The notes below the pieces were generated by a model. The model made no database searches. It was not told the origin of the DNA and saw only the letters and a program-made list of their open reading frames with translations. 64,000 nt of DNA from positions 62,001-126,000 of IMG/VR virus record IMGVR_UViG_3300044821_000131. The stretch is one strand, 5' to 3'. The stretch's first letter is position 1; each line of letters begins with the position of its first letter. The position numbers were made by a program, and so were the translations under genes. Below are positions 2,486-45,766 of the stretch, piece by piece.

Positions 2486-2780
2486 TCAACGTGATAAACC
2501 CGTGCCGATAGATCTCACCCTCTTGTTCTTTGCACCCAAGGAACTCAGCAAGCGTGAGATTGAATTGATTGATGCCTTGGACTGGTATCAGCCGGACCGT
2601 GAAGCACATCCCGGGCGTCAGACTATAATTCTGGTCAGTGAGCAGAAACTGCGCTCATGCCTGCGAGAGGATTTCGAGCCGTACGCTCTGGAGGACATTG
2701 GTCTCAAGCATCTTCGCGCAGTTGATTATATCGACCCAGTCTTACATCGTTGGGATCGGGATATGTTCTACCACGCATAA
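2478..2780 (+). CDS. hypothetical protein
   Basis: 100-aa ORF; stop lies in the first copy of the 27-nt repeat. Confidence 0.6.
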   Translation: MLDQRDKPVPIDLTLLFFAPKELSKREIELIDALDWYQPDREAHPGRQTIILVSEQKLRSCLREDFEPYALEDIGLKHLRAVDYIDPVLHRWDRDMFYHA

Positions 2781-2855
2781 GTGCGCGATATGTTCTACCA
2801 CGCATAAGTGCGTGATATGTTCTACCACGCATAAGTGCGTGATATGTTCTACCAC
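2760..2855. repeat. 27-nt tandem repeat, ~3.5 copies, each with an internal inverted repeat
   Basis: GATATGTTCTACCACGCATAAGTGCG(C/T) at 2760, 2787, 2814, partial at 2841; contains CACGCA-TAAG-TGCGTG. Confidence 0.95.
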
Positions 2856-3558: not shown

Positions 3559-3905
3559 AAAAACTAAAATGCTCGGTGTTCGTTACGTTACTCGCGCTAG
3601 CCGTCTGCGGCTGCGTTCAGTTCGGTCCGGTGCCTGTGTACGACGGTTATGCCGTACAAGGCACCCAAACACGACAAGTGCTCGTGGTCAACGCCCCATT
3701 GCACGTGGTGCTGTCGGAAACCCATGTGCTGCCTCTTGTTCCTGTGCCAGGACTTACTTGGATACCTGGTAACTGGGTTTGGCATTCGTATCGTGGGGTG
3801 CCCGAAAATCCATATTGCGGTCGCTACGGCTTCACCTACCCGTGGGGATGTGGCTACTACAACTATGCTCCGTCGTATTATGTACATGGTCAGCCGAGGT
3901 GGTGA
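3555..3905 (+). CDS. predicted lipoprotein with YXWGXW-like repeat
   Basis: Lipobox-like LLALAVCGC; WIPGNWVW; Tyr/Gly-rich tail. Confidence 0.65.
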   Translation: MKKLKCSVFVTLLALAVCGCVQFGPVPVYDGYAVQGTQTRQVLVVNAPLHVVLSETHVLPLVPVPGLTWIPGNWVWHSYRGVPENPYCGRYGFTYPWGCGYYNYAPSYYVHGQPRW

Positions 3906-6868: not shown

Positions 6869-7527
6869 TGTCCGAAACAATCTACGTTGGTCTGTTTCAA
6901 GGTAATAATAAAAAGTCCCCATTGGTAAAATATAATGTTCAAGGCGATATACAAACCATCGCGGCGCTGGCACACAGGACGTTGCGAGGTATATTATTGC
7001 TTGAAGCTGATGGGTGCTTTGATGATTTGACAATAGGGGTTCATCCAATGTCACAGGATACGCTCGACATCATTGAACCTTTGCATCAATTAATGCACTG
7101 TCTTTGGACTGTGCGGGCGGATTACGACACATTCGGAAGTAAAATCGCTAATGTCGAGTTTATAGTCGCACTGGTAGAATTTAACGTTATGCTGTTAGGC
7201 TCCAAGATTGGTCGTACGGGTAACGCTTCCACGGACAGGTGGACGCGTCATGAGATTTGGCAGCGCTTGTGTTGTTTCAATATGTCGAATGCCAACAGAC
7301 CGTCGGAGTCGGAGTTAACGGCGGACTCATATCAAAATATCGTCGAGTTGTTGCGTGACCTCTATGTTCTGTACGCTGAAGCTCCGATTGATGAGTACAT
7401 TAGCAATAAGTTCATATACGATCCCATCAAACCAGACATGGAAATCTTTGTCTCCAATAAGAAAGAACTGGCTTGGACAGCCAAGGCCTTTAAATCGAAC
7501 AAAGCTTTAAATCGAACAAAGCTTTAA
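6868..7527 (+). CDS. hypothetical protein
   Basis: 219-aa ORF, TAATG coupling; C-terminus runs into the 17-nt repeat. Confidence 0.7.
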   Translation: MSETIYVGLFQGNNKKSPLVKYNVQGDIQTIAALAHRTLRGILLLEADGCFDDLTIGVHPMSQDTLDIIEPLHQLMHCLWTVRADYDTFGSKIANVEFIVALVEFNVMLLGSKIGRTGNASTDRWTRHEIWQRLCCFNMSNANRPSESELTADSYQNIVELLRDLYVLYAEAPIDEYISNKFIYDPIKPDMEIFVSNKKELAWTAKAFKSNKALNRTKL

Positions 7528-7568
7528 ATCGAACAAAGCTTTAAATCGAACAAAGCTTTAACCGAATA
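7484..7568. repeat. 17-nt AT-rich tandem repeat, ~5 copies
   Basis: AAAGCTTTAAATCGAAC exact at 7501, 7518, 7535; degenerate at 7484 and 7552. Confidence 0.95.
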
Positions 7569-12602: not shown

Positions 12603-12908
12603 ATGAACTACACATCGAAAGTAACCGAATGCCTGGGCTGTCCGCCGGGTGATCCTGATGTCTTTGCCAGATACGTCGCCAGTCTTCATCCGGAGGGTAA
12701 AGCTGCATCGAATGAATGTGCTGTGTCCGAGTGTGCTTTACCCGAAGTGACTACAGGCATTTTGGAGGCATACGTGTCGGACATCTATAAAGCAGCAGCA
12801 ATCAATCCCGGTGGTTGGGACGAGCAAAGAATCAAGAACTTCATTCGAGCCGTGCTGCAGTCATACGCTGAGTCGACTTGGAAAACTCGACAAGAACGTT
12901 CTTCATGA
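12603..12908 (+). CDS. protein whose N-terminus is a copy of the neighbouring RAMP N-terminus
   Basis: 12621-12692 matches 13046-13117 at 59/72 nt (17/24 aa); the rest appears unrelated. Confidence 0.7.
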   Translation: MNYTSKVTECLGCPPGDPDVFARYVASLHPEGKAASNECAVSECALPEVTTGILEAYVSDIYKAAAINPGGWDEQRIKNFIRAVLQSYAESTWKTRQERSS

Positions 12909-13018: not shown

Positions 13019-13687
13019 ATGATACTCAAAATCCACAGTGTTCTCGTAACCGAATGCATGGGCACCAAACCGGCTGACCCTGATGTCTTTGCCAAATACA
13101 TTGGCAGTCTTCATCCGTCCGGCACCGTTCAGCGTGACGAACTGGATAACGCCAAGGCCCGTGAAGCCACGGGCACCACGATCTTTCATCGTGACGTCTC
13201 CGACGACGCCCCCATCATCTATGACTATCAGGTCAAAGGCTTCATCAAGGCGGCCTGCACCGCCACTAACCGCTTCGACAAGGAATACCGTAACGGCCTG
13301 GGCAAGCTGACGGCCTGTCGCGCCAAGATCACGGAGGCATTGTTCATCAAGCCCCGGATCATTCGAATGGAAATGCCCAAGGGTCTGGAACGCGGCGTTT
13401 GTGAACGCCCGTTGATCGCCGAGACCGCCCAGGGCAAACGCGTGACAGTGGTGCGTTCCGAAACGGTTCCGGCCGGCACGGTGCTCGACTTCGAGATCCA
13501 CCTCTTCGCCAAGGAGCTTCTGCCCCATCTCAAAGTGTGGTTGAACTACGGCCTGATGATCGGTCTCGGCCAATGGCGTAACAGCGGCAAGGGCCAGTTC
13601 AAATGGGAACTGATGAACCCGGAAGTGCTGCCTACGCCTGACGCCATGGACAAAGTGCCCAAGTCGGAAGACGCGGGCGAAGAATAA
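13019..13687 (+). CDS. solitary Cas7/RAMP-fold protein (Csf2/Csm3-like, Vipr-like)
   Basis: N-terminal strand LVTECMGT; GTTIFHRD..PIIYDYQVKGFIKAAC; CERPL.AETAQGKR..V.SE.VPAGT..FEI; C-terminal glycine-rich loop GLGQWRNSGKGQF. No other cas genes in the window. Confidence 0.85.
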   Translation: MILKIHSVLVTECMGTKPADPDVFAKYIGSLHPSGTVQRDELDNAKAREATGTTIFHRDVSDDAPIIYDYQVKGFIKAACTATNRFDKEYRNGLGKLTACRAKITEALFIKPRIIRMEMPKGLERGVCERPLIAETAQGKRVTVVRSETVPAGTVLDFEIHLFAKELLPHLKVWLNYGLMIGLGQWRNSGKGQFKWELMNPEVLPTPDAMDKVPKSEDAGEE

Positions 13688-13711
13688 ATTCAGTTCGCGA
13701 ATATCTGTCAT

Positions 13712-13753
13712 TGCCCGGGCCTTGATACAGGGCTCGGGCATTGAACTTTTCAA
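13712..13753 (+). terminator. GC-rich hairpin (plus small AT hairpin) between RAMP gene and array
   Basis: TGCCCGGGCCTTG-ATA-CAGGGCTCGGGCA (13 bp, two GU), then TTGAA-CTT-TTCAA; terminator or processing site. Confidence 0.5.
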
Positions 13754-13800
13754 ATAACTGCTTCGCCGCTAATCCCGGTGAGGTCGATTATCCTTTAAAG

Positions 13801-14991
13801 CAAAGTGCAGGCAGAGTTTAGTTGGGTAATGGTTTGGTAAGGTCACGTGTGGTCGTGTGAGGGTATAGTCAGGTTAGGTACTGGTCAAGTTAAGCGTGGT
13901 GCTGGCGAAGTGCGGTATTGTGTAGCGTCGGCAAGGTAATGTTACGCGTGGTGACGGCAAAGTAATGTTACGCGTCGTGACGGCAACGTATCGTTTAGTT
14001 AAGGTAAAGTAAGGTGGAGCGCAGTGCAGGTAATGTTACGCGGTGTGAGGGCAACGTATCGTCTAGTTAAGGTAAAGTACAGTGGTGTGATGGTCAGGTT
14101 TGGCCTTGTGCGGGTACGGCAAAGTATAGTTCGGTATTGGCAAAGTTTCGTATTGTGAGGGTAAGGTAAAGTCTGGTCACGTAACGGTAAGGCGTGGTCG
14201 TGTGAGGGCATCGTAAAGTTCTGTCTTGTCTTGGCACTGTAAAGTTCAGTGCTGGCGTGGTGCAGTCGTGTGGAGGCACTGTTTGGTAGCGCGCAGGTAA
14301 AGTAGAGTGCCGTGCCGTGCTGGTAAGGTCTCGATATGCGAAGTGATGGCAAAGTTCTGTTGCGTGTCGGCAAAGTTGAGTCGTGTAACGGCAAAGTCCG
14401 GTCGTGTAACGGCAAAGTCCAGTCCTGTGTCGGCGTAGTGCAGTCCAGTCGTGTCACGGTTTGGTATAGTACAGTGAAGTGCTGGCGTGGTACAGTCCCG
14501 TTAAGGCCCTGTTTGGTAAAGTGAAGTGGGGGCAAAGTTCTGTGTTGTGTCGGCAATGCAAAGTATCGCGCAGTGCAGGCAATGTACAGTTCCGTTCGGG
14601 TCATGTTAGGTGCAGTATAGGCAAGGTCAAGCGCAGTGCAGGCAACGTCAAGTGCAGTAAAGGCGAAGTCATGTTAGGTGCCGTGAAGGCAACGTATGGT
14701 GGCGTTCGGTTTGGGTATGGTATCGTGCAGTGAGGTGAAGGCTAAGTATGGCGCCGTAGAGGCAAGGTTGGGTCCCGCAGAGTGATGGTATGGTCAAGTA
14801 TAGTGCGGTGAAGTGACGGCAAAGTTCAGTAACGTAACGTGAAGGCAAAGTGTGGTAACGTGGTGTGATGGCCGAGTACCGTATCGTCACGTGCGGGCAT
14901 AGTGCCGTGAGGTGAAGGCAACGTGCCGCATCGTCACGTGAGGGCAGAGTAGCGTATCGTCACGTGCGGGCAAAGTATGGGTTATGTTGGC
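13801..14991 (+). ncRNA. pentamer-periodic array [NN-NGY]n punctuated by NN-NGGY hexamers; candidate guide RNA for the RAMP
   Basis: 14581 onward parses as aa-tgt ac-agt tc-cgt tc-gggt ca-tgt ta-ggt gc-agt at-aggc aa-ggt ca-agc gc-agt gc-aggc; the register held throughout where I parsed it; 5- and 26-nt periods are not codon multiples. Confidence 0.8.
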
Positions 14992-15009
14992 ACACACCGG
15001 GTGATTGAG

Positions 15010-15093
15010 GCTTGCACGGCACGGATTTTAAAGATCAGCAGTGCCCCATAGTTTCTAACACTGATCCCGTCCGCCCGTGCAAGCTTCTTTTCT
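15010..15093 (+). terminator. long hairpin with U-tract closing the array transcript
   Basis: GCTTGCACGG (15010-15019) / CCGTGCAAGC (15075-15084), inner GATCAG/CTGATC, then TTCTTTTCT. Confidence 0.65.
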
Positions 15094-15118
15094 GAATTTT
15101 AATTTCCAGTAAATTTAT

Positions 15119-16544: not shown

Positions 16545-16905
16545 AAAGGCAAAAGGTAAGAGAACCAAAATCTCGTCCTCGTCCTGCGGGGCTTCGAGGT
16601 TCAGGCTTCATATAAGTTATAGACCAGAGACACCTATCGAAATGTTTGGCGCCAAGCACAATCTCACGCTACACGTGGAGGAGCGCGAAGCAGATCGGCC
16701 TAATTACCGAGCAGATAATCGATATCATGCCAGCTTTCCAAATGTGGAGGTTAAGGACGGAATCTTTCTTAGATCTGTTTTCGGCGACGGCGATACGGTT
16801 GCAGCAGCACTTAAGGACTATTGTGGTCAACTGTCCTCGAAATGTATAGTGATTGACGCTATGCTGGAAACTCGTCGAGAGCTTGATGTGCCGAAACTCT
16901 TATGA
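16534..16905 (+). CDS. hypothetical protein (weak HicB-like segment)
   Basis: YHASFPNVE...FGDGDTVAAAL. Confidence 0.6.
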   Translation: MKSKKAKGKRTKISSSSCGASRFRLHISYRPETPIEMFGAKHNLTLHVEEREADRPNYRADNRYHASFPNVEVKDGIFLRSVFGDGDTVAAALKDYCGQLSSKCIVIDAMLETRRELDVPKLL

Positions 16906-17693
16906 ACCTATATCTAAAAGATTCAGACGGTAATTGGAAATCACACAGCTACGAAACGTTATCCGATTTGGCCAATGAGTTTGCCAAACGTAACATAAAA
17001 ATCGGCAATGACGTGACGATCGGCGATTACGTGGCGCTCGGCAATGACGTGACGATCGGCGATGACGTGATGATCGGCAATTACGTGAGGATCGGCAATC
17101 GCGTGACGATCGGCAATTTCGTGAAGATCGGCGATTACGTGACGATCGGCAATCGCGTGGCGATCGGCAATCGCGTGACGATCGGCAATGGCGTGACGAT
17201 CGACAATTACGTGACGATCGGCGATGACGTGACGATCGGCAATCGCGTGACGATCGGCGATTACGTGGCGCTCGGCAATGGCGTGACGATCGGCGATGAC
17301 GTGGCGATCGGCAATGACGTGAAGATCGGCAATGACGTGGAGATCGGCAATGACGTGAGGATCGGCAATCGCGTGATGATCGGCAACGACGTGGAGATCG
17401 GCGATGACGTGATGATCGGCGATTACGTGGTTATTCCCAAAGCTGCGAACGTCCAACTCCAATACGACTTAGTAGTTATCAACAACTTGGGATCCCGGAA
17501 CGCGGCCTTATCTGCTGTTAAAATCAAGGATATCATCCATGTCGCGACTGGGTGCTTCAGTGGCACGATTGATGAGTTTGAGAAGAGGGTAAAGGAAGTG
17601 CATGGGGAGAGTGAGCATGGGCAACAGTACGCTATGGCTTTAACTTACATTCATTCGAGGTTGGGTCGTAAAACAAGAGCTCGGAAGAAATAG
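16902..17693 (+). CDS. left-handed beta-helix (hexapeptide repeat) protein
   Basis: Long run of IG(N/D)xVx hexapeptides from an 18-nt repeat; C-terminal GSRN...TGCFSGTIDEF. Confidence 0.85.
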   Translation: MNLYLKDSDGNWKSHSYETLSDLANEFAKRNIKIGNDVTIGDYVALGNDVTIGDDVMIGNYVRIGNRVTIGNFVKIGDYVTIGNRVAIGNRVTIGNGVTIDNYVTIGDDVTIGNRVTIGDYVALGNGVTIGDDVAIGNDVKIGNDVEIGNDVRIGNRVMIGNDVEIGDDVMIGDYVVIPKAANVQLQYDLVVINNLGSRNAALSAVKIKDIIHVATGCFSGTIDEFEKRVKEVHGESEHGQQYAMALTYIHSRLGRKTRARKK

Positions 17694-21953: not shown

Positions 21954-23180
21954 ATGTGTGATCACTCACGATTCGAAATTCATGCCACCGTTGATCGTCA
22001 AGTACACGATCAAAAACTCAAATCCCTAAATCTTAAACTCGCCGTCAAATGCGTCGACTGCGGTCAAGAATTCTATGTGGCCGGCACCGCACCGGACCTG
22101 ATACTTAAAGAAAGAGAACCAGATGGCACAGTCCACACCTACGCCGCCACCCGTACCTTGCCCGTACTCGACGTGGCATCCTCCATCACGCCACTGCCTC
22201 CGCTGAGCATCATCATACCCGTGCTCAACGATAAGGATGAGGCCAATGCAACAATTCGATCAATCCGCGCAACCTCGCCGCCGGATGTGGAAATTATCGT
22301 GGTCGACGATGCCTCAGACAACGTCCTGGTGATCGAGGATAAGTCCGCACGCCTGATTCGATACAAACAACGTATAGGTGCTGGAGCTGCACGCCACGCG
22401 GGGGCATTCGAAGCCAAAGCGCCCTACTTGCTGTTGCTCGACGCGCATATGCGCTTTGATCCCGGGTGGTATGAGCCGGCCATGGCACGTCTTCGTAATA
22501 CTAAACTGAACGTCGTGTGGTGTGCTGCTTGTATGGGCCTTAGCGAGGAAAATATGGAGCTGACGCCACATACGCCGATGTACACTGGTGCTGATCTGAT
22601 CTTCTGGGACCCGATTACCAAGCGGGTGTTCGAAGGCGTGTGGCGTCCGGAGGTTCAACACGCGGACGACTATGAGATTCAGTGTTTGATGGGTGCTTGT
22701 TACTTTATGCGTCGCGATTGGTTCTTTCACATTCATGGTCTTGAGTGGAACAGGAAATGGGGCAGCGAAGAACCTTTTCTCTCGTTGAAGACTTGGCTGG
22801 CCGGCGGAACAGTGCGTCTGATGAAGAGCGTCAAGATCGGCCACAAGTTCCGCAATTCCACCCCGTACTCGACCGAGCTGTCCAGCATACTGTACAATAA
22901 GATCCGGGCGATGAAGGAACTGCTGCCCGACGAGCTGTACCAGTTTCTGCTCGCCAAGATCCCGGATGACAAAAACAAGTTTAGTGCTTTACAGCAAGTG
23001 AAATTCAGCGACGCGGACATCACTGAGGAGCAGGCATACTATAAAAAGATTTTCACACATGATGTGTACTGGTTCTTCGAGAAGTTCGGGATTAAGAATC
23101 CGCTTGACGAAACTAAGCTCGATGGTAATGTAACTTTGAGTGGCGGGTTGGCGCAGCCTGGCAGCGCGCAAGTCTCATAA
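21954..23180 (+). CDS. GT-A glycosyltransferase, polypeptide GalNAc-transferase-like (GT2/GT27)
   Basis: SIIIP, EIIVVDDAS, LLLLDAHMRFDPGW (DxH), and MGACYFMRRDWF...WGSEEPFLSLKTWLAGG...IGHKFR, which parallels the ppGalNAc-T WGGENxELSFRxWxCGG...VGHxFR block. Confidence 0.8.
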   Translation: MCDHSRFEIHATVDRQVHDQKLKSLNLKLAVKCVDCGQEFYVAGTAPDLILKEREPDGTVHTYAATRTLPVLDVASSITPLPPLSIIIPVLNDKDEANATIRSIRATSPPDVEIIVVDDASDNVLVIEDKSARLIRYKQRIGAGAARHAGAFEAKAPYLLLLDAHMRFDPGWYEPAMARLRNTKLNVVWCAACMGLSEENMELTPHTPMYTGADLIFWDPITKRVFEGVWRPEVQHADDYEIQCLMGACYFMRRDWFFHIHGLEWNRKWGSEEPFLSLKTWLAGGTVRLMKSVKIGHKFRNSTPYSTELSSILYNKIRAMKELLPDELYQFLLAKIPDDKNKFSALQQVKFSDADITEEQAYYKKIFTHDVYWFFEKFGIKNPLDETKLDGNVTLSGGLAQPGSAQVS

Positions 23181-23218
23181 ACTTGAGGTCGTTGGTTCAA
23201 ATCCAACATCCGCTCCCA
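23142..23218 (+). tRNA. tRNA with CAU anticodon (elongator Met or Ile2), CCA encoded
   Basis: Acceptor GGCGGGT/ATCCGCT, D arm GCGC/GCGC, anticodon CAAGT-CTCATAA-ACTTG, T arm GTTGG-TTCAAAT-CCAAC; lacks initiator hallmarks. Confidence 0.9.
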
Positions 23219-27925: not shown

Positions 27926-28688
27926 ATCATTTAACGAACTTATTAAGAAGATCCATCTCGGTACTAACCCTTTCGAAGGTTATCCAAAGGATCAATGGCC
28001 CGTCCAACACTGGGGCGGCTGGGGCTCCGATCATCCGTTCTTCGCGGAAATGGTGGCCAAAATTAAACCGCACCTGATCATCGAAGTCGGCAGCTTTCTC
28101 GGCGGTTCCGCCATCCAGCAAGGACAATTGCTGAAGAAGAACGGATTGAACGACTCCGCTGTGCTGTGCGTCGATACGTGGCTTGCTGAACAGATCCTGT
28201 GGTCGTTGCCGGATCAACGTGAGAAGCTCAAACTCCGCTTCGGCCGACCGTGCTTCTATTACACCTTCCTTAGTAACATCATCGATGTCGGCCTGCAGAA
28301 CATGGTGGTGCCGCTGTCTATGCCTAGTTTGAGTGCCGCGCGTTATCTTAAGCAATTGGGAGTCACGGCGCCGATGATCTACATTGACGGATGCCATGAA
28401 GAATTCGATTGTCGTCGGGATCTCGATATGTACTGGGATCTATTGGAGCCAGGTGGTGGAATGATCATTGACGATTACGTCTGCGGCTCTGACATGTTTG
28501 CCGGGCTGGTGCGTGATGTGAATCGATTCGTATACGATACGCATAACGATGCTTTGAACTACGATTGGTTTATACCTCAACACGAGGGCGTGCAGCCGCA
28601 GAGTATAACGGAGGTGCAATTAGCCTTCGGGTTGCGTAGCGACAAGGTGTGGCGGGAAACCAACAAGGTTGTCGTATGGAAAGTTTAA
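27918..28688 (+). CDS. class I SAM-dependent methyltransferase (Methyltransf_24-like)
   Basis: IIEVGSFLGGS, CVDTW, MIYIDGCHE, GGMIIDDY. Confidence 0.85.
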   Translation: MSKSFNELIKKIHLGTNPFEGYPKDQWPVQHWGGWGSDHPFFAEMVAKIKPHLIIEVGSFLGGSAIQQGQLLKKNGLNDSAVLCVDTWLAEQILWSLPDQREKLKLRFGRPCFYYTFLSNIIDVGLQNMVVPLSMPSLSAARYLKQLGVTAPMIYIDGCHEEFDCRRDLDMYWDLLEPGGGMIIDDYVCGSDMFAGLVRDVNRFVYDTHNDALNYDWFIPQHEGVQPQSITEVQLAFGLRSDKVWRETNKVVVWKV

Positions 28689-29005
28689 GTCCCAGTCTTG
28701 TATTCTGTGTCGTGGCGGGAGTCGCCTTGTTTACAGGATTGGGCGACTATCTCTCCAAGAAGTTCTCATTGAACCCAAATTGGCACTTGGCATTTTATGC
28801 TGCTTCGGCGTACTTGGTTGGAGTGCTATTTTGGTTTCGGATGATCTATCATTTTCAAAGTCTGGCCCGCGCTGGTGAGTTGTGGATACTTACGTCGGGC
28901 GTATTGTTACTGGTGATCAGCCAATGTATATTTCACGAGCCCTTGTCGCCGAGGCAATGGGCTGGTGTGGCATTGGGTCTGATCGCGATCGTGTTATTGT
29001 TGTGA
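28676..29005 (+). CDS. small 4-TM DMT/SMR-type transporter
   Basis: Four hydrophobic helices; IFHEPLSPRQWAGVALGLIAIVLL. Confidence 0.75.
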   Translation: MESLSPSLVFCVVAGVALFTGLGDYLSKKFSLNPNWHLAFYAASAYLVGVLFWFRMIYHFQSLARAGELWILTSGVLLLVISQCIFHEPLSPRQWAGVALGLIAIVLLL

Positions 29006-29103
29006 CGGAGAAATTGGCTTGCGAGTTTAATTTTCATTATTCATAATCGGCGGCGTGAATTTTTTACTGGCACAACTTTAATGTCGTATGTTATCTTCAA
29101 TTT

Positions 29104-30155: not shown

Positions 30156-30608
30156 ATGCCTGATCTCATAATCGGTATCTCAGTCCTGCAACCTACTTGG
30201 ATCGATAAGGTCTATCGACTCTGGTTTCAAGCCCAGAAAGCCGACGGCGCAAAAAATCAAGGCTGGATCTTCGCCGTCGATAGCACGTCGGCCAGTACCT
30301 TGACCAAGATGCCCGAATACCCGGATGGCTGTAACTCGATCTGGCACTTCACCAGGCAGGGCGACACACTCAACTGCTCACCTTCGGTGAATTGGATATC
30401 TTGGGGTTTCCACAATGCTGGTAGCTGGACGACGCGCTATGTCGAGATGACCATCGCGGAACAGTCCATGTCGAAAGCGGGCGATGATACCGGCGAAGTC
30501 CCTACACGTTTGCGTATTGGACACACGGTTCATTACGATCTGAATAATGGTGCGGCCGATCCTCAGCAGGTGATCGCCGAGTACCGTCAGAAAGGGGTCC
30601 TGAAGTGA
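30156..30608 (+). CDS. hypothetical protein (DUF6527-like segment)
   Basis: WHFTRQGDTLNCSPSVNW. Confidence 0.6.
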   Translation: MPDLIIGISVLQPTWIDKVYRLWFQAQKADGAKNQGWIFAVDSTSASTLTKMPEYPDGCNSIWHFTRQGDTLNCSPSVNWISWGFHNAGSWTTRYVEMTIAEQSMSKAGDDTGEVPTRLRIGHTVHYDLNNGAADPQQVIAEYRQKGVLK

Positions 30609-32524
30609 ATCGGGCAGCACTCAGAGATGGACAATTCGCTGAGGTGCCCGATAAGGACATCGACTTTGAATTCACCTCTCCCAATCAATTTCTCGGCACC
30701 CATGCCAACTTGATCCCATTGCAGTCCGCAGTACAAGGTGGACGCCTGTTCTACGGCGCTCGATTCGCCAATCAGGCGTTGCCGATCAATAACTCGGAGG
30801 CCCCACTCGTACAGCTAAAGTCAGACGATGATCCGCAAGGCCGATCCTTCGACGAAATCCTCGGCGCCTCGGCTGGCGCCGTACACGCCAAACATGCCGG
30901 TACTGTACATGCTGTTACGCCAGACCATGTTATCGTTAAAACCAAGGATGGAGAAAAAGTGACACACGGATTGTACAACGAATTTCCGTATAACAGAAAG
31001 ACGAAGATCCACAACACTCCGGCGATTAAACCCGGGGATACTGTGGTCCCCGGACAGCTCCTCGCTCATTCCAATTTTACGGACAAGCACGGCACTCTGG
31101 CGCTAGGACTCAATGCTCGCGTCGGACTCGTGCCGTATCTTGGTCGCTCCATGGACGACGCGATTGTGATCAGTGAATCCTTTGCTAAACGTCTGGCCAG
31201 CAACCATGCCTACGGCTACGATCTCGACTACAAGCGTGGTGTGAAGGGCGGCAAAGCGCATCATGTCGGGCTGTTTCCCAACAAGTTCATTAATGACCAG
31301 TTAGATAAGCTGGACGATGAGGGGATCGTGAAGCCGGGACAGATTGTTAATCCTGGTGATCCGATCATCTTGGCCACGCGGCCACGCGTTGTGTCCTCAG
31401 CTTCGGCGCAGTTGGGTCTTCTGTCCAAACATATGAAGAACGCGCGCACGGATGCTTCCGTTCTATGGGAGCACGAAACTCCCGGGCGTGTGGTGGATGT
31501 CCACCGCGGTCGTGGTGGGGTGAAATTGAATATCCATACGGATGTGCCTACGCAGGTGGGCGATAAGCTCGCATTCAGAAGCGGAGGCAAGGCGGTTATA
31601 TCCACCATCCTACCAGACGAACACGTACCGCGCACGGCAGATGGCCAGCCATTGGAGGTTCTGCTAAATCCTCAGAGCATACCATCCCGGGTCAATCCGT
31701 CCTTGGTCTATGAGCTCCTGCTCGGCAAGGTCGCAAAGAAAACCGGACGCCCCTACAAACTGCCAGCCTTTACCAAGAACGGCGAAGCCTGGCACAATGT
31801 CGTCAAAAAAGAACTGGATGATAACGGCCTCACCGATACCGAAGACGTCTTTGACCCCCTCCTGAATAAAAAACTCGAGAACCCCATCACCGTCGGTAAT
31901 GGCTATGTCCTGAAATTACACCACACATCCGCCAGCAAGATAAGTGCTAGAGGTCAAGGTAGTTACAGCTCAGATCAGGAGCCGCTTCATGGTGGTGGTG
32001 AGGGTGGGCAGGGCAAGCGGTTATCGGGACTCGAGTCGGGTGCGTTATTGTCATCTGGGGCGTACGGGGTATTACGGGATGGTGCTACGGTACGTGGGAC
32101 ACGCAACGATCAATTTTGGCGGCAGTTACGTGCGGGGCAGGATCCGGCTGAGCCTGGCAGTTCGTTTGCGTGGGAGAAGTTCCGTGCTTTGTTACAGGGG
32201 TCTGGTTATCAGGCGCGCAAGCTCGGGGCTGGTCGGGAGCGTTTAGGTTTTTGGACGGACAAGGATTTAGCGGAGCGCAAGCCGATCAAGGTGAAGACCG
32301 GGGATATTGTGGATTTGAATTCCCTAGACCCAGTTCGAGGTGGGCTATTTGATCCGGCCCTGACGGGCAATCAGAGCTGGGGTTCGATCGATCTACCCAC
32401 CGCGTTACCAAACCCGGCGGCCGAGGATGTGATTTGCAAGATGTTGGGGCTTACGAATGCGCAGTATCGAAGGATACTGGCTGGAGAAGAGTCTTTACCC
32501 GAGCATTTGCTTCATCCACAATAG
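30605..32524 (+). CDS. rpoB: phage RNA polymerase: beta C-terminal half fused to a beta' N-terminal segment
   Basis: NLIPLQ...RFANQALP, LALGLNARVG..Y.G..MDDAIVISE, GDKLAFRSGGKAVIS.I...P...DG.P.EVLLNP..IPSRVN, YVLKLHH..KISAR; then beta'-like GGLFDP..TG...WGSIDLP. Confidence 0.9.
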   Translation: MNRAALRDGQFAEVPDKDIDFEFTSPNQFLGTHANLIPLQSAVQGGRLFYGARFANQALPINNSEAPLVQLKSDDDPQGRSFDEILGASAGAVHAKHAGTVHAVTPDHVIVKTKDGEKVTHGLYNEFPYNRKTKIHNTPAIKPGDTVVPGQLLAHSNFTDKHGTLALGLNARVGLVPYLGRSMDDAIVISESFAKRLASNHAYGYDLDYKRGVKGGKAHHVGLFPNKFINDQLDKLDDEGIVKPGQIVNPGDPIILATRPRVVSSASAQLGLLSKHMKNARTDASVLWEHETPGRVVDVHRGRGGVKLNIHTDVPTQVGDKLAFRSGGKAVISTILPDEHVPRTADGQPLEVLLNPQSIPSRVNPSLVYELLLGKVAKKTGRPYKLPAFTKNGEAWHNVVKKELDDNGLTDTEDVFDPLLNKKLENPITVGNGYVLKLHHTSASKISARGQGSYSSDQEPLHGGGEGGQGKRLSGLESGALLSSGAYGVLRDGATVRGTRNDQFWRQLRAGQDPAEPGSSFAWEKFRALLQGSGYQARKLGAGRERLGFWTDKDLAERKPIKVKTGDIVDLNSLDPVRGGLFDPALTGNQSWGSIDLPTALPNPAAEDVICKMLGLTNAQYRRILAGEESLPEHLLHPQ

Positions 32525-43717: not shown

Positions 43718-45766
43718 TTGTATATGACCGATCCAACCACGTCTTGGGAAAACGCTGCATTCATTAAATTGGCGCGTCAGGGATCTATCGTGTTTCTGCC
43801 AACGTCCGACGGAAACTACTTGCTGCAGCGCGAGACCAACGGCAACCTGCGCCCACCTGGTGGTGGCAAAGACCGCAGCGACAAAGGGCTGTTCGACTGC
43901 ATTGTGCGCGAGATCCACGAAGAGTTCGGCCTTGATCCGTTGGAAATCAAAAAGAAACTCAAATTCCTCGGGTTTGAATACAGGAAACCTTTCTGGGGAA
44001 ACGCCGTATTCGAGCTGCGACAGCACGGTCTCAAACCCGGCGTCTATCAAGCCAGTAATGATCCCAGTGAGAAAATTCACCTGGTACGTGCCTCCGTTGA
44101 CCATGACGACTACGTAGGTCCCTATCCCCATAAACTGCTCTCGGATGCGGCCAAGGAGAAGGGTGATGACCTTTTCAAATCGGCGGAAGATAAATCCAAA
44201 GAAGATCGGGAAATCATTGCGGTCGACTTCGATGGCGTTTTGGCGAAGCACATGGAAAATCAGACCTCGCTTGGTGAACCGGTGCCCGCCATGATCGACA
44301 AAGTGCAATCTTGGATCGCTGAGGGTAAGCATGTCGTAATCTTCACTGCCCGGGCGCATGATCCGAAGAATGTACCGGCCATCAAGGCTTGGATCAAGGA
44401 GCACGGTTTGGGGGATCTCGATGTTACCAACCGAAAGATTCCGGAGATGTCGGTGTTCTATGACGACAAGGCGGTGCAGATTCGGAAGAATACAGGCAAA
44501 GTGGCACGGTCGATAATCGTCTGCCCCGTGGACGATTTGGACAAATCCGCGGCAGTCACCCCGCAAGTCACCCCGCAAGTCACCCCGCAAGTCACCCCGC
44601 AAGTCACCCCGCAAGTCACCCCGCAAGTCGCGAGTCCCACCACCGGTCCCGAAGCCATCGGACTTGCTTTGAGCAATCTCGATCTTAATCAAGAGGAGGT
44701 GCGGGCCAATGCAGAGATCAAACGCGGGCTGAAGACGAAACGCGGCTCGGCCGTGAAGCGTCTCGGATTCATTCAAGGATTCCGTCGGACCGGTGTACAC
44801 CCGAAAGATCTGATGCTGAAACAGGTGCCCGTCATTCCGCCACAATTCCGGCCATTCTCTGTCGCAGGCGACGTATTCATTCCCGGTGATGCCAACGAAC
44901 TCTATCGCGATCTGATCAACATGGTCGGCGTGCACAAAGAGCTTCAACGTAATTTGGGTGAAGGTGGTGCAGCCTCAAATAAATTGAGGATATATGATGC
45001 GATGCGCGCCGTGTATGGTTACGGGGAACCAACGGCGCCGAAGACTAAGGAGCGTGGAGTATCAGGCTTTCTCAAGAAGCTGACGGGTAGCAATCCTAAA
45101 TTCAGCTATTCGAACCGGCATCTATTGAGTCGTGATATGGATTTTGTGGGACGTGGTGTCGTCGGTGTCGATCCTGATATGAATTTGGACGAGATTGGAG
45201 TTCCGGAGGAAATGGCGTGGAAGATTTATGCCCCGTATATTCAGCGCCGTTTAGTGCGCAGTGGCATGGGCCTTGAGGCTGCAGTGCGATCTGTTCGTGA
45301 TAAGAACGAACAAGCACACAGGATGTTGCTGGAGGAATCTAAAGAACGTCCCGTCATGTATTCTCGTAGCCCGGCTTGGCATAAATTTTCGGTGCTGGGA
45401 GGCTATCCGAAAATTATTCCTGGTAACACTGTTATGGTTAATCCGTTGGTTACAAGCGGCTTAGGTATGGATTTTGATGGCGACACCTGTAATATTCATG
45501 TTCCGGCACTTGCTGACGCGGTGGATGACGTCAAGAATAAATTGATGCCATCGAGGATGTTATTTTCGACCAAAGGTCGGGATCAGGTGATGCCTACGCC
45601 CAAGCAGGAAATGATTCTCGGTATGGCCTCGGCGCAGCAACGTCCTTCAAAGCGTCCGCCGGTATCTTTTCCTGACGAGGCCTCGGCACTAGCGGCCATC
45701 CATAACGGTTCGGTGCGTTTAAGTGATGAGGTTCAGATTGGTAAGGCAAAGCCGATCATAGCATGA
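43718..45766 (+). CDS. rpoC: Nudix + HAD phosphatase + VTPQ linker + RNA polymerase beta' catalytic fragment
   Basis: Nudix GGGKDRSDKGLFDCIVREIHEEFGL; HAD IAVDFDGVL; beta' VPVIPPQFRP, LLSRDMDFVGRGV, SRSPAWH, GMDFDGD (45464-45484). Confidence 0.9.
   Translation: MYMTDPTTSWENAAFIKLARQGSIVFLPTSDGNYLLQRETNGNLRPPGGGKDRSDKGLFDCIVREIHEEFGLDPLEIKKKLKFLGFEYRKPFWGNAVFELRQHGLKPGVYQASNDPSEKIHLVRASVDHDDYVGPYPHKLLSDAAKEKGDDLFKSAEDKSKEDREIIAVDFDGVLAKHMENQTSLGEPVPAMIDKVQSWIAEGKHVVIFTARAHDPKNVPAIKAWIKEHGLGDLDVTNRKIPEMSVFYDDKAVQIRKNTGKVARSIIVCPVDDLDKSAAVTPQVTPQVTPQVTPQVTPQVTPQVASPTTGPEAIGLALSNLDLNQEEVRANAEIKRGLKTKRGSAVKRLGFIQGFRRTGVHPKDLMLKQVPVIPPQFRPFSVAGDVFIPGDANELYRDLINMVGVHKELQRNLGEGGAASNKLRIYDAMRAVYGYGEPTAPKTKERGVSGFLKKLTGSNPKFSYSNRHLLSRDMDFVGRGVVGVDPDMNLDEIGVPEEMAWKIYAPYIQRRLVRSGMGLEAAVRSVRDKNEQAHRMLLEESKERPVMYSRSPAWHKFSVLGGYPKIIPGNTVMVNPLVTSGLGMDFDGDTCNIHVPALADAVDDVKNKLMPSRMLFSTKGRDQVMPTPKQEMILGMASAQQRPSKRPPVSFPDEASALAAIHNGSVRLSDEVQIGKAKPIIA
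44555..44626 (+). repeat. 12-nt coding repeat x6 (VTPQ)
   Basis: GTCACCCCGCAA x6. Confidence 0.95.

What the first reader, a model, noticed from the sequence alone, without database searches (positions are those of the whole stretch)
13019..15093. Solitary Cas7/RAMP gene plus a 1.2-kb pentamer-coded RNA array: candidate repeat-programmed RNA-guided system
Seen: one RAMP-fold gene (GLGQWRNSGKG loop) with no cas1/cas5/cas6/nuclease and no repeat-spacer CRISPR array. About 110 nt downstream lies ~1,190 nt in which GT (sometimes GC) recurs every 5 nt with three variable bases between, closed by a terminator-like hairpin. Established: Cas7-family RAMPs polymerise along guide RNA with a fixed nucleotide footprint per subunit. 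Inference: the constant GY is the per-subunit handle and the interspersed variable bases form a non-contiguous targeting code. I recall recent preprint descriptions of phage 'VIPR' systems (RAMP plus GGY/NN RNAs), which I cannot verify here. This locus would be a variant, because the first base of the trimer is any nucleotide (AGT, CGT, TGT, GGT all common).
Basis: partly seen in the sequence, partly recalled or inferred. Interest (0 to 1): 0.95.

Follow-up and report, generated by a model that had tools for sequence, protein, structure and literature searches.

The report
Jumbo-phage VIPR guide-RNA locus
A small Cas7-like gene in a 204-kb phage sits beside a 1.2-kb array of five-base repeats, so this is a new example of the recently described phage 'VIPR' RNA-guided DNA-silencing systems; its one unusual feature is an extra base after every 4-5 repeats.

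Summary
The ORF at 13019-13687 (+) is predicted to have a RAMP/Cas7 fold, and all top 50 PDB matches are Csm3, Cmr or type VII Cas7 subunits. About 110 nt downstream, 13797-14991 is the only period-5 tract in the 64-kb window (lag-5 z = 14.9). Inner units read NNN-G-Y, with three positions near maximal entropy.

After every 4-5 pentamers there is one hexamer, NNNGGY. This gives about 50 modules of 21 or 26 nt (lag-21 z = 16.5, lag-26 z = 18.3).

Homologues abut a same-strand period-5 array in 80 of 80 viral loci and 72 of 80 genome loci. The punctuation is family-wide in the viral loci. Arrays diverge faster than the adjacent gene in all 14 pairs compared.

VIPR is now published (bioRxiv 10.64898/2026.04.26.720920 and follow-ups). 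Those papers already report relaxed repeats (YNNNG, WGT/NN) and 'staggered' arrays. This is therefore a new member of a known kind, not a new system.

Still open: no target was found, sequence similarity to the reference Vipr is weak, and the meaning of the one-base punctuation is unknown. A truncated vipr paralogue lies just upstream.

The parts
12603..12908 (+). Truncated vipr paralogue, 101 aa. It covers the N-terminal strand, the helical bundle and helix-1, and lacks the thumb and G-loop.
   Evidence: BLASTP against Vipr gives 40% identity over 81 aa, E = 1e-13. About 75 nt are 85% identical to vipr codons 10-34. No second copy was found in any of the 80 related viral loci.
13019..13687 (+). 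vipr: a 222-aa single-domain RAMP (Cas7-like) protein. The G-loop is at residues 182-192 and the thumb hairpin at about 126-150.
   Evidence: The AlphaFold model has pLDDT 82.7. The top 50 Foldseek PDB matches are all Csm3, Cmr or type VII Cas7 subunits, with E down to 6e-6. There are 230 homologues, 529 viral loci and 156 genome loci. The G-loop aligns to SUSP1 Vipr.
13712..13740 (+). 13-bp GC-rich hairpin followed by a U-rich stretch, lying between vipr and the array. It may be an attenuator or partial terminator.
   Evidence: RNA fold of 13685-13815 gives -46.4 kcal/mol, z = -3.55. Any function is inferred.
13797..14991 (+). vrRNA-like array of about 230 units NNN-G-Y, grouped into about 50 modules of 21 or 26 nt (rarely 31). 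Each module ends in a hexamer NNNGGY. Module junctions are semi-conserved as G-a-n-GGC|AA-n-GT.
   Evidence: Autocorrelation, parses and logos. Local tandem duplications of 21-, 26- and 68-nt blocks. No excess RNA secondary structure, z = -0.43. No Rfam match.
15007..15096 (+). Long terminal hairpin followed by UCUUUUCU. This is the probable transcript end of the array.
   Evidence: Fold of 14975-15100: 13-bp outer stem, -38.3 kcal/mol, z = -1.77. Relatives also end their arrays with a hairpin, for example L003 near 3710-3735.

Best explanation
This is a VIPR-type system (Viral Interference Programmable Repeat) carried by an uncultivated 204-kb jumbo phage. The + strand from about 13.8 to 15.09 kb is transcribed into a long, unstructured RNA that ends at the 15007-15087 hairpin.

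Copies of the 222-aa RAMP protein polymerise along this RNA, one protomer per five nucleotides. Each protomer holds the invariant G and the pyrimidine, which correspond to G2 and Y3 of the canonical GGY motif, and leaves the variable bases exposed. By analogy with the SUSP1 system, the exposed bases pair non-contiguously with double-stranded DNA of a competing mobile element and block its transcription.

The first G of GGY is not required in this family. This fits the replacement of the Asp that contacts G1 in SUSP1 Vipr (D177) by a conserved Gln (Q185), while the residues that contact G2 and Y3 (W186, R187) are kept.

The extra G after every 4-5 repeats divides the RNA into about 50 modules of the form G(YNNNG)k. 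Each module is about one turn of a Vipr filament. The modules are probably separate short guides or hinged segments.

Shown here: the fold, the array statistics, the gene-array linkage and the fast evolution of the variable positions. Inferred: transcription, protein binding, DNA targeting and the role of the punctuation.
For: - RAMP fold: model pLDDT 82.7, and the top 50 PDB matches are all Cas7-type subunits. The best viral match is a family member that UniProt names a RAMP superfamily protein.
- The period-5 array is on the same strand and unique in the window.
- Linkage: 80 of 80 IMG/VR loci and 72 of 80 GTDB loci that encode a homologue have a period-5 array directly abutting the gene. 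The array is on the gene's strand in the viral loci checked.
- In related arrays, n1, n2 and n3 substitute at 10-13% against 3% for G and 5.6% for Y. Arrays are more diverged than the adjacent vipr gene in 14 of 14 pairs, for example 88.7% against 99.8% identity.
- The array RNA has no excess secondary structure and no coding periodicity.
- The published mechanism and residue contacts come from bioRxiv 10.64898/2026.04.26.720920 and 10.64898/2026.04.26.720927. Alternative repeat classes are listed.
- SUSP1 residue numbering was verified.
Against: - Sequence similarity to the reference type II Vipr is weak. hhalign gives probability 48-56% and E about 1e-4, with confident alignment only at the G-loop.
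- SUSP1 Vipr was not among the top BFVD structural matches.
- No target was found. Rule tests against 1.8 Mb of related loci, and for self-targets in the window, were at background or explained by duplicates and purine-rich composition. Eight exact-pattern scans of viral and metagenome collections gave no hits.
- A 21-nt module has only two fully variable pentamers, which is too few for a unique site under the published NNx rule.
- No vap accessory gene was found.
- No expression data exist, and no sigma-70-like promoter was seen before the array.
Confidence: 0.8

Rival explanations
1. The components are the same, but the job differs. The kilobase-long array is not a set of specific guides. 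It acts as a sponge or decoy that soaks up Vipr protein (the phage's own or a rival's), or it regulates the phage's own or host genes through short, low-specificity words.
For: Modules carry little information: AA and Ga are constant at the ends and only 2-3 pentamers are free. No target was found. The literature shows that solo vrRNAs redirect a rival's VIPR to decoy sites.
Against: There was no excess of self-matches in the 64-kb window under any rule. The variable positions evolve fast and the frame is preserved across hundreds of loci, as expected for specificity-bearing positions. A sponge would not need diverse variable bases.
Confidence: 0.1
2. The array acts as DNA, not RNA. It would be a field of protein-binding sites (iteron-, centromere- or pac-like) recognised by the neighbouring protein.
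For: Modules of 21 and 26 bp are near 2 and 2.5 helical turns. There is no direct evidence of transcription.
Against: The partner protein has an RNA-binding RAMP fold with a G-loop and thumb. In all 80 viral loci the G-rich strand of the array is the coding strand of the gene, which a double-stranded DNA site would not require. Arrays often run straight into the vipr start codon. Three of five positions are unconstrained, unlike iterons.
Confidence: 0.05
3. The tract is protein-coding. JGI called a 201-aa ORF at 13999-14604 on the - strand, which would encode a low-complexity repeat protein.
For: An open frame of 201 aa exists on the - strand.
Against: Lag-3 periodicity is depleted (z = -4.4), while lags 5, 21 and 26 dominate, and none of these is a multiple of 3. 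The longest + strand ORF is 84 aa. The open frame follows from the skewed base composition. Equivalent spurious ORFs cluster inside the arrays of relatives.
Confidence: 0.02

Closest known systems
VIPR type II (Escherichia phage SUSP1, P. fulva prophage): Vipr plus GGY/NN vrRNAs (bioRxiv 10.64898/2026.04.26.720920 and .720927)
   Same: A small single-RRM RAMP with a G-loop, thumb and helical insert. It is phage-encoded, with no cas genes. The adjacent same-strand pentanucleotide array has conserved G/Y and hypervariable bases. The G-loop keeps the W-R pair that contacts G2 and Y3.
   Different: SUSP1 has four vrRNAs of about 100 nt, each with 9-16 uninterrupted YNNGG repeats and a pseudoknot tail, plus vap1. 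Here there is one 1.2-kb tract of about 230 repeats with a free first base, a one-base slip every 4-5 repeats, no internal tails and no vap. Protein similarity is confident only at the G-loop, and D177 is replaced by Q.
Non-canonical VIPR repeat classes (NNNGG, YNNNG, NNNNG; WGT/NN, TGH/NN)
   Same: In the published register, NNN-G-T is Y-NNN-G. This matches the YNNNG class and is close to WGT/NN.
   Different: Those reports describe short arrays; speaks of about 10 repeats. The held text does not say whether the protein clade is the same.
'Staggered' vrRNA arrays (fig. S18 of 10.64898/2026.04.26.720920)
   Same: Guides abut one another without tails, and the boundaries are offset by one nucleotide.
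   Different: The legend speaks of vrRNAs overlapping by 1 nt. Here modules are 5k+1 nt with two adjacent G residues at each junction. The figure is not held, so identity cannot be checked. The paper says this architecture was not confirmed by sRNA-seq.
Class 1 CRISPR backbone subunits (Csm3, Cmr4, type VII Cas7)
   Same: They are the best structural matches. They also polymerise on guide RNA, and a thumb flips out bases at a fixed interval.
   Different: CRISPR subunits have a 6-nt footprint on contiguous spacers and come with a CRISPR array, Cas6, Cas5, Cas10 and Cas1-2. None of these is present here.

Membership tests
VIPR | Vipr protein with a RAMP fold: RRM core, glycine-rich loop and thumb hairpin | tested here: met
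   Model pLDDT 82.7; strands, helices and a long hairpin at 126-150; G-loop at 182-192. The top 50 PDB matches are all Cas7-type subunits.
VIPR | Small protein of about 20-25 kDa without a second RRM domain | tested here: met
   222 aa here, and homologues are mostly 182-253 aa. The model shows one beta-alpha core.
VIPR | Not in a CRISPR-Cas context | tested here: met
   Neighbouring ORFs have no cas hits. No repeat-spacer array is present in the 64-kb window. Conserved neighbours in relatives are Erf, RecT and SSB.
VIPR | Adjacent tandem pentanucleotide array with conserved scaffold bases and hypervariable bases, on the gene's strand | tested here: met
   for the window. 80 of 80 viral and 72 of 80 genome loci have such an array.
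VIPR | Canonical GGY scaffold (YNNGG repeats) | tested here: not met
   The first scaffold base is free: A43, C35, G26, T22 of 126. This matches the published alternative class YNNNG, so it does not exclude membership.
VIPR | Sequence homology to reference Vipr (SUSP1 / X1U2U4 clade) | tested here: inconclusive
   hhalign gives E = 1.1e-4 to 1.8e-4 and probability 48-56%. The alignment is collinear over 176 columns but confident only at the G-loop. A structural bridge could not be run.
VIPR | Viral or proviral location | tested here: met
   The contig is 204 kb and carries a virion protein hit and a phage RNAP beta-like gene. At least 529 homologous loci occur in IMG/VR.
VIPR | vrRNAs are expressed and co-purify with Vipr | not testable with these tools
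   This needs sRNA-seq and a pull-down.
VIPR | Targets found with the one-nucleotide skip rule (NNx) | tested here: inconclusive
   The NNx rule showed the largest excess over shuffled guides in 1.8 Mb of related loci (14 hits against 0.3 at the highest score). The hits were duplicated loci and purine-rich matches. There was no self-target signal, and eight collection scans were empty.
VIPR | Accessory vap gene (typical but not universal) | tested here: not met
   No neighbour is shared with related loci apart from a partial match of ORF 16902-17693 in 2 loci. No family-specific neighbour cluster was found. The paper accepts stand-alone vipr genes.
Class 1 CRISPR-Cas (Cas7/Csm3) | CRISPR repeat-spacer array plus Cas5, Cas6, large subunit and adaptation genes | tested here: not met
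   Similarity is at the fold level only, with 11-18% identity.

The most novel reading that the evidence does not exclude
The one-base punctuation may define a guide architecture that has not been characterised. About 50 self-contained modules G(YNNNG)k, with k = 4-5, would each span about one turn of a Vipr filament. They would work either as many one-turn mini-RNPs or as a kilobase-long hinged filament reading a long stretch of target. The third variable base, freed by the D-to-Q change in the G-loop, may also be read, giving a triplet code rather than a doublet code. The truncated upstream paralogue could be a filament cap or a decoy for rival guides that aim at early vipr codons.
Probability: 0.2. 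Interest if true: 0.8.

Novelty: new member of a known kind. Interest (0 to 1): 0.45.

Why it matters
VIPR is a months-old class of RNA-guided DNA recognition, proposed as the ancestor of the CRISPR RAMPs. All mechanistic work so far is on type II systems with short GGY/NN guides.

This locus belongs to a large, widespread clade: at least 529 viral loci, plus MAG contigs from Verrucomicrobiota, Planctomycetota, Clostridia, Coriobacteriia and Bacteroidota. The clade differs from type II in three linked ways:
- the first scaffold base is free;
- the Asp that contacts G1 is replaced by Gln;
- the arrays are long and punctuated by one extra base about once per filament turn.

The published text says such tail-less arrays have not been confirmed experimentally. 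The clade therefore offers a direct test of how guide length, register and processing are set without a tail, and of whether the code can use three bases per repeat. It also places VIPR in a jumbo phage that has its own RNA polymerase.

Tried and rejected
- Pfam, PHROGs, NCBIfam, PADLOC and a PDB sequence search gave nothing for the protein. Only the fold identifies it.
- Rfam gave no match for 12.3-15.5 kb.
- megablast and tblastn against GenBank phages found no close relative. There were four unannotated gut phages at 34-38% identity, and SUSP1 was not hit.
- I tested targeting rules (2 or 3 read bases, 0-3 skipped) with all family arrays against 1.8 Mb of related loci. Period-5 rules only re-found arrays. 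The NNx excess was not convincing.
- Single-module matches in the window were at shuffle level.
- Eight exact multi-module or triplet patterns searched in IMG/VR and JGI metagenomes gave 0 hits. These scans need perfect matches and a guessed junction offset, so a negative result is weak.
- I tried to use substitution classes to decide whether the third variable base is read. n3 varies as much as n1 and n2, but G and Y are also elevated, so the test does not decide.
- The coding reading of the 201-aa minus-strand ORF was rejected on periodicity.
- The supplement text of the VIPR paper holds no description of which type carries staggered arrays.

Full report
**1. What is in the sequence**

The + strand ORF 13019-13687 encodes 222 aa ending in the loop GLGQWRNSGKG. 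Homologues begin at the same N-terminal strand, so the ATG at 13019 is the start; the JGI gene call starts at M14.

From about 13797 to 14991 the sequence has a strong five-base rhythm. Lag-5 identity is 0.471, against 0.271 +/- 0.013 in composition-matched nulls (z = 14.9). Lag 3 is depleted (z = -4.4). In a sliding scan, this is the only such tract in the 64-kb window.

A dynamic-programming parse gives 231 units, and 99.6% of them end in G-pyrimidine, against 73% in nulls. In the 126 inner pentamers the first three positions carry 0.02-0.05 bits. The fourth is always G. The fifth is T in 110, C in 15 and A in 1.

**2.

Autocorrelation is even higher at lags 21 and 26 (0.53; z = 16.5 and 18.3). 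After every 4 or 5 pentamers one unit is a hexamer, NNNGGY. The tract is therefore about 50 modules of 21 nt (26 of them), 26 nt (22) or 31 nt (2).

Each module can be written G(YNNNG)k. Junctions are semi-conserved as G-a-n-GGC|AA-n-GT, so a 21-nt module has only two fully free pentamers. Blocks of 21, 26 and 68 nt are locally duplicated, so the array grows by module duplication.

The RNA has no more predicted structure than shuffles (z = -0.43) and no Rfam match. A 13-bp hairpin lies between the gene and the array (13712-13740). A long hairpin followed by a U-rich run closes the array (15007-15096).

**3. The protein**

Profile libraries and a PDB sequence search found nothing. An AlphaFold model built on 30 homologues has pLDDT 82.7. 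Its 50 best PDB matches are all Cas7-type backbone subunits: Csm3, Cmr and type VII Cas7, with E down to 6e-6. The best viral match is a family member that UniProt names a RAMP superfamily protein. The RAMP fold is therefore confirmed.

**4. Linkage of gene and array**

The family is large. It has 230 clusters in the protein index, at least 529 loci in IMG/VR and 156 loci in GTDB species representatives from many phyla.

- All 80 viral loci retrieved have a period-5 region that abuts the gene, upstream or downstream, and 72 of 80 genome loci do as well.
- In the viral loci the arrays lie on the gene's strand. They contain 15-20% hexamers and show lags at 5k+1 (26, 31, 36), so the punctuation is family-wide.
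- Most relatives use G-C, some use G-A, and a few use G-T as here.

**5. How the arrays evolve**

Among related arrays the three free positions substitute at 10-13%, G at 3% and the pyrimidine at 5.6%. In 14 of 14 pairs the array is more diverged than the adjacent gene, for example 88.7% against 99.8% identity. This is the behaviour expected of positions that carry specificity within a preserved frame.

**6. What is known**

VIPR systems were described in 2026. They consist of a phage RAMP (Vipr) and vrRNAs of 9-16 YNNGG repeats. The NN bases pair with DNA while one target base is skipped per repeat, and binding silences competing elements (bioRxiv 10.64898/2026.04.26.720920).

Cryo-EM shows one protomer per repeat. 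G1 is read by H17 and D177. G2 sits between R138 and W178. Y3 is held by R179. The filament has six subunits per turn in the free state and five per turn when bound to DNA (10.64898/2026.04.26.720927).

The first paper also lists alternative repeats (NNNGG, YNNNG, NNNNG) and 'staggered arrays' of abutting vrRNAs offset by one nucleotide. That architecture was not confirmed by sRNA-seq. A later preprint lists WGT/NN and similar motifs. In the published register, the units here are Y-NNN-G.

**7. Comparison with the reference protein**

I located SUSP1 vipr at 28474-29061 (-) of KT454805.2, with its YNNGG vrRNAs alongside. Those vrRNAs have no register slips.

Profile-profile alignment of the two families is weak, with E about 1e-4 and probability 48-56%. 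It is collinear over 176 columns but confident only at the G-loop. There, GLGQWRNSGKGQF aligns with GVGDWRPR-FGRF. W178 and R179 are kept as W186 and R187, while D177 becomes Q185, which is conserved in at least 90% of this family.

The residue that reads G1 is changed in the clade whose arrays do not conserve G1. This is a consistent inference, not a test.

**8. Mechanism proposed**

The array is transcribed on the + strand. Vipr protomers bind one per five bases through the invariant G and pyrimidine. The free bases are presented for gapped pairing with DNA of a competitor, and binding represses that competitor.

The extra G ends one module and starts the next. Module size (4-5 repeats here, 5-7 in relatives) is close to one filament turn. 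Whether modules are cut apart or act together cannot be decided here.

Confidence that this is a VIPR-type system is about 0.8. Confidence in any particular reading of the punctuation is low.

**9. Targets**

None was found.

- Rule tests with all family arrays against 1.8 Mb of related loci gave the largest excess for the NNx rule, but the hits were duplicated loci and purine-rich stretches.
- Module matches within the window were at shuffle level, which agrees with the published absence of self-targeting.
- Eight exact patterns scanned in IMG/VR and JGI metagenomes gave no hits. These scans demand perfect matches and a guessed junction offset, so they are weak negatives.

**10. Context**

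The contig is JGI 3300044821 Ga0480567_0000003, 204 kb. It carries an RNA polymerase beta-like gene that is 31% identical to those of Salmonella phage Arash and Vibrio phage D69, and a tRNA-Met. No close DNA relative exists among GenBank phages.

No vap-like accessory gene was found. Conserved neighbours in relatives are Erf, RecT and SSB.

Just upstream, ORF 12603-12908 is a truncated copy of the Vipr N-terminal third. A stretch of about 75 nt is 85% identical at the DNA level. This copy is unique to this locus among the 81 examined.

**11. Verdict**

It is a new member of a known kind.

The points worth follow-up are the family-wide one-base punctuation, the unusually long array, the G-loop change, the truncated paralogue and the jumbo-phage setting.

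Noticed in passing
window 12603-12908 (+): A 101-aa ORF is a truncated paralogue of the Vipr N-terminal third. About 75 nt are 85% identical to vipr codons 10-34. It is absent from the 80 related viral loci. A published report says rival guides aim at early vipr codons, so it could be a decoy or a cap; this is untested.
   Followed up: partly
window 13999-14604 (-): The source metagenome annotation calls a 201-aa gene inside the array. Periodicity argues that it is a spurious ORF caused by skewed composition. Similar spurious ORFs occur in the arrays of relatives.
   Followed up: yes
window 2760-2855; 7488-7561; 44554-44629: Three short, near-perfect tandem repeats: 27 nt x 3.6, 17 nt x 4.4 and 12 nt x 6.3. 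Their role is unknown.
   Followed up: no
window 16902-17693 (+): A left-handed beta-helix (hexapeptide repeat) protein. Its C-terminal domain also occurs 0.5-1 kb from vipr in two related loci (L047, L059).
   Followed up: partly
window 30605-32524 (+); 23142-23218 (+): An RNA polymerase beta-like gene, 31% identical to those of Salmonella phage Arash and Vibrio phage D69, and a tRNA-Met. The contig is a 204-kb jumbo phage with no close cultured relative.
   Followed up: partly
L013, L015, L018-L023, L027, L029, L032, L037, L042, L047; L101: In some relatives the 'pyrimidine' scaffold position is A (NNNGA arrays). L101 uses GT as here. L021-L023 carry a second array about 6 kb from the first.
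   Followed up: no
window 13019-13687 against flanks: vipr is 57% G+C, against 49% in the flanking 3-4 kb and 51% for the window. This hints at acquisition from elsewhere.
   Followed up: no
L001-L080 array pairs: Arrays of near-identical phages differ far more than their vipr genes (14 of 14 pairs). G and Y positions are also somewhat elevated, so recombination or slippage may add to selection.
   Followed up: partly
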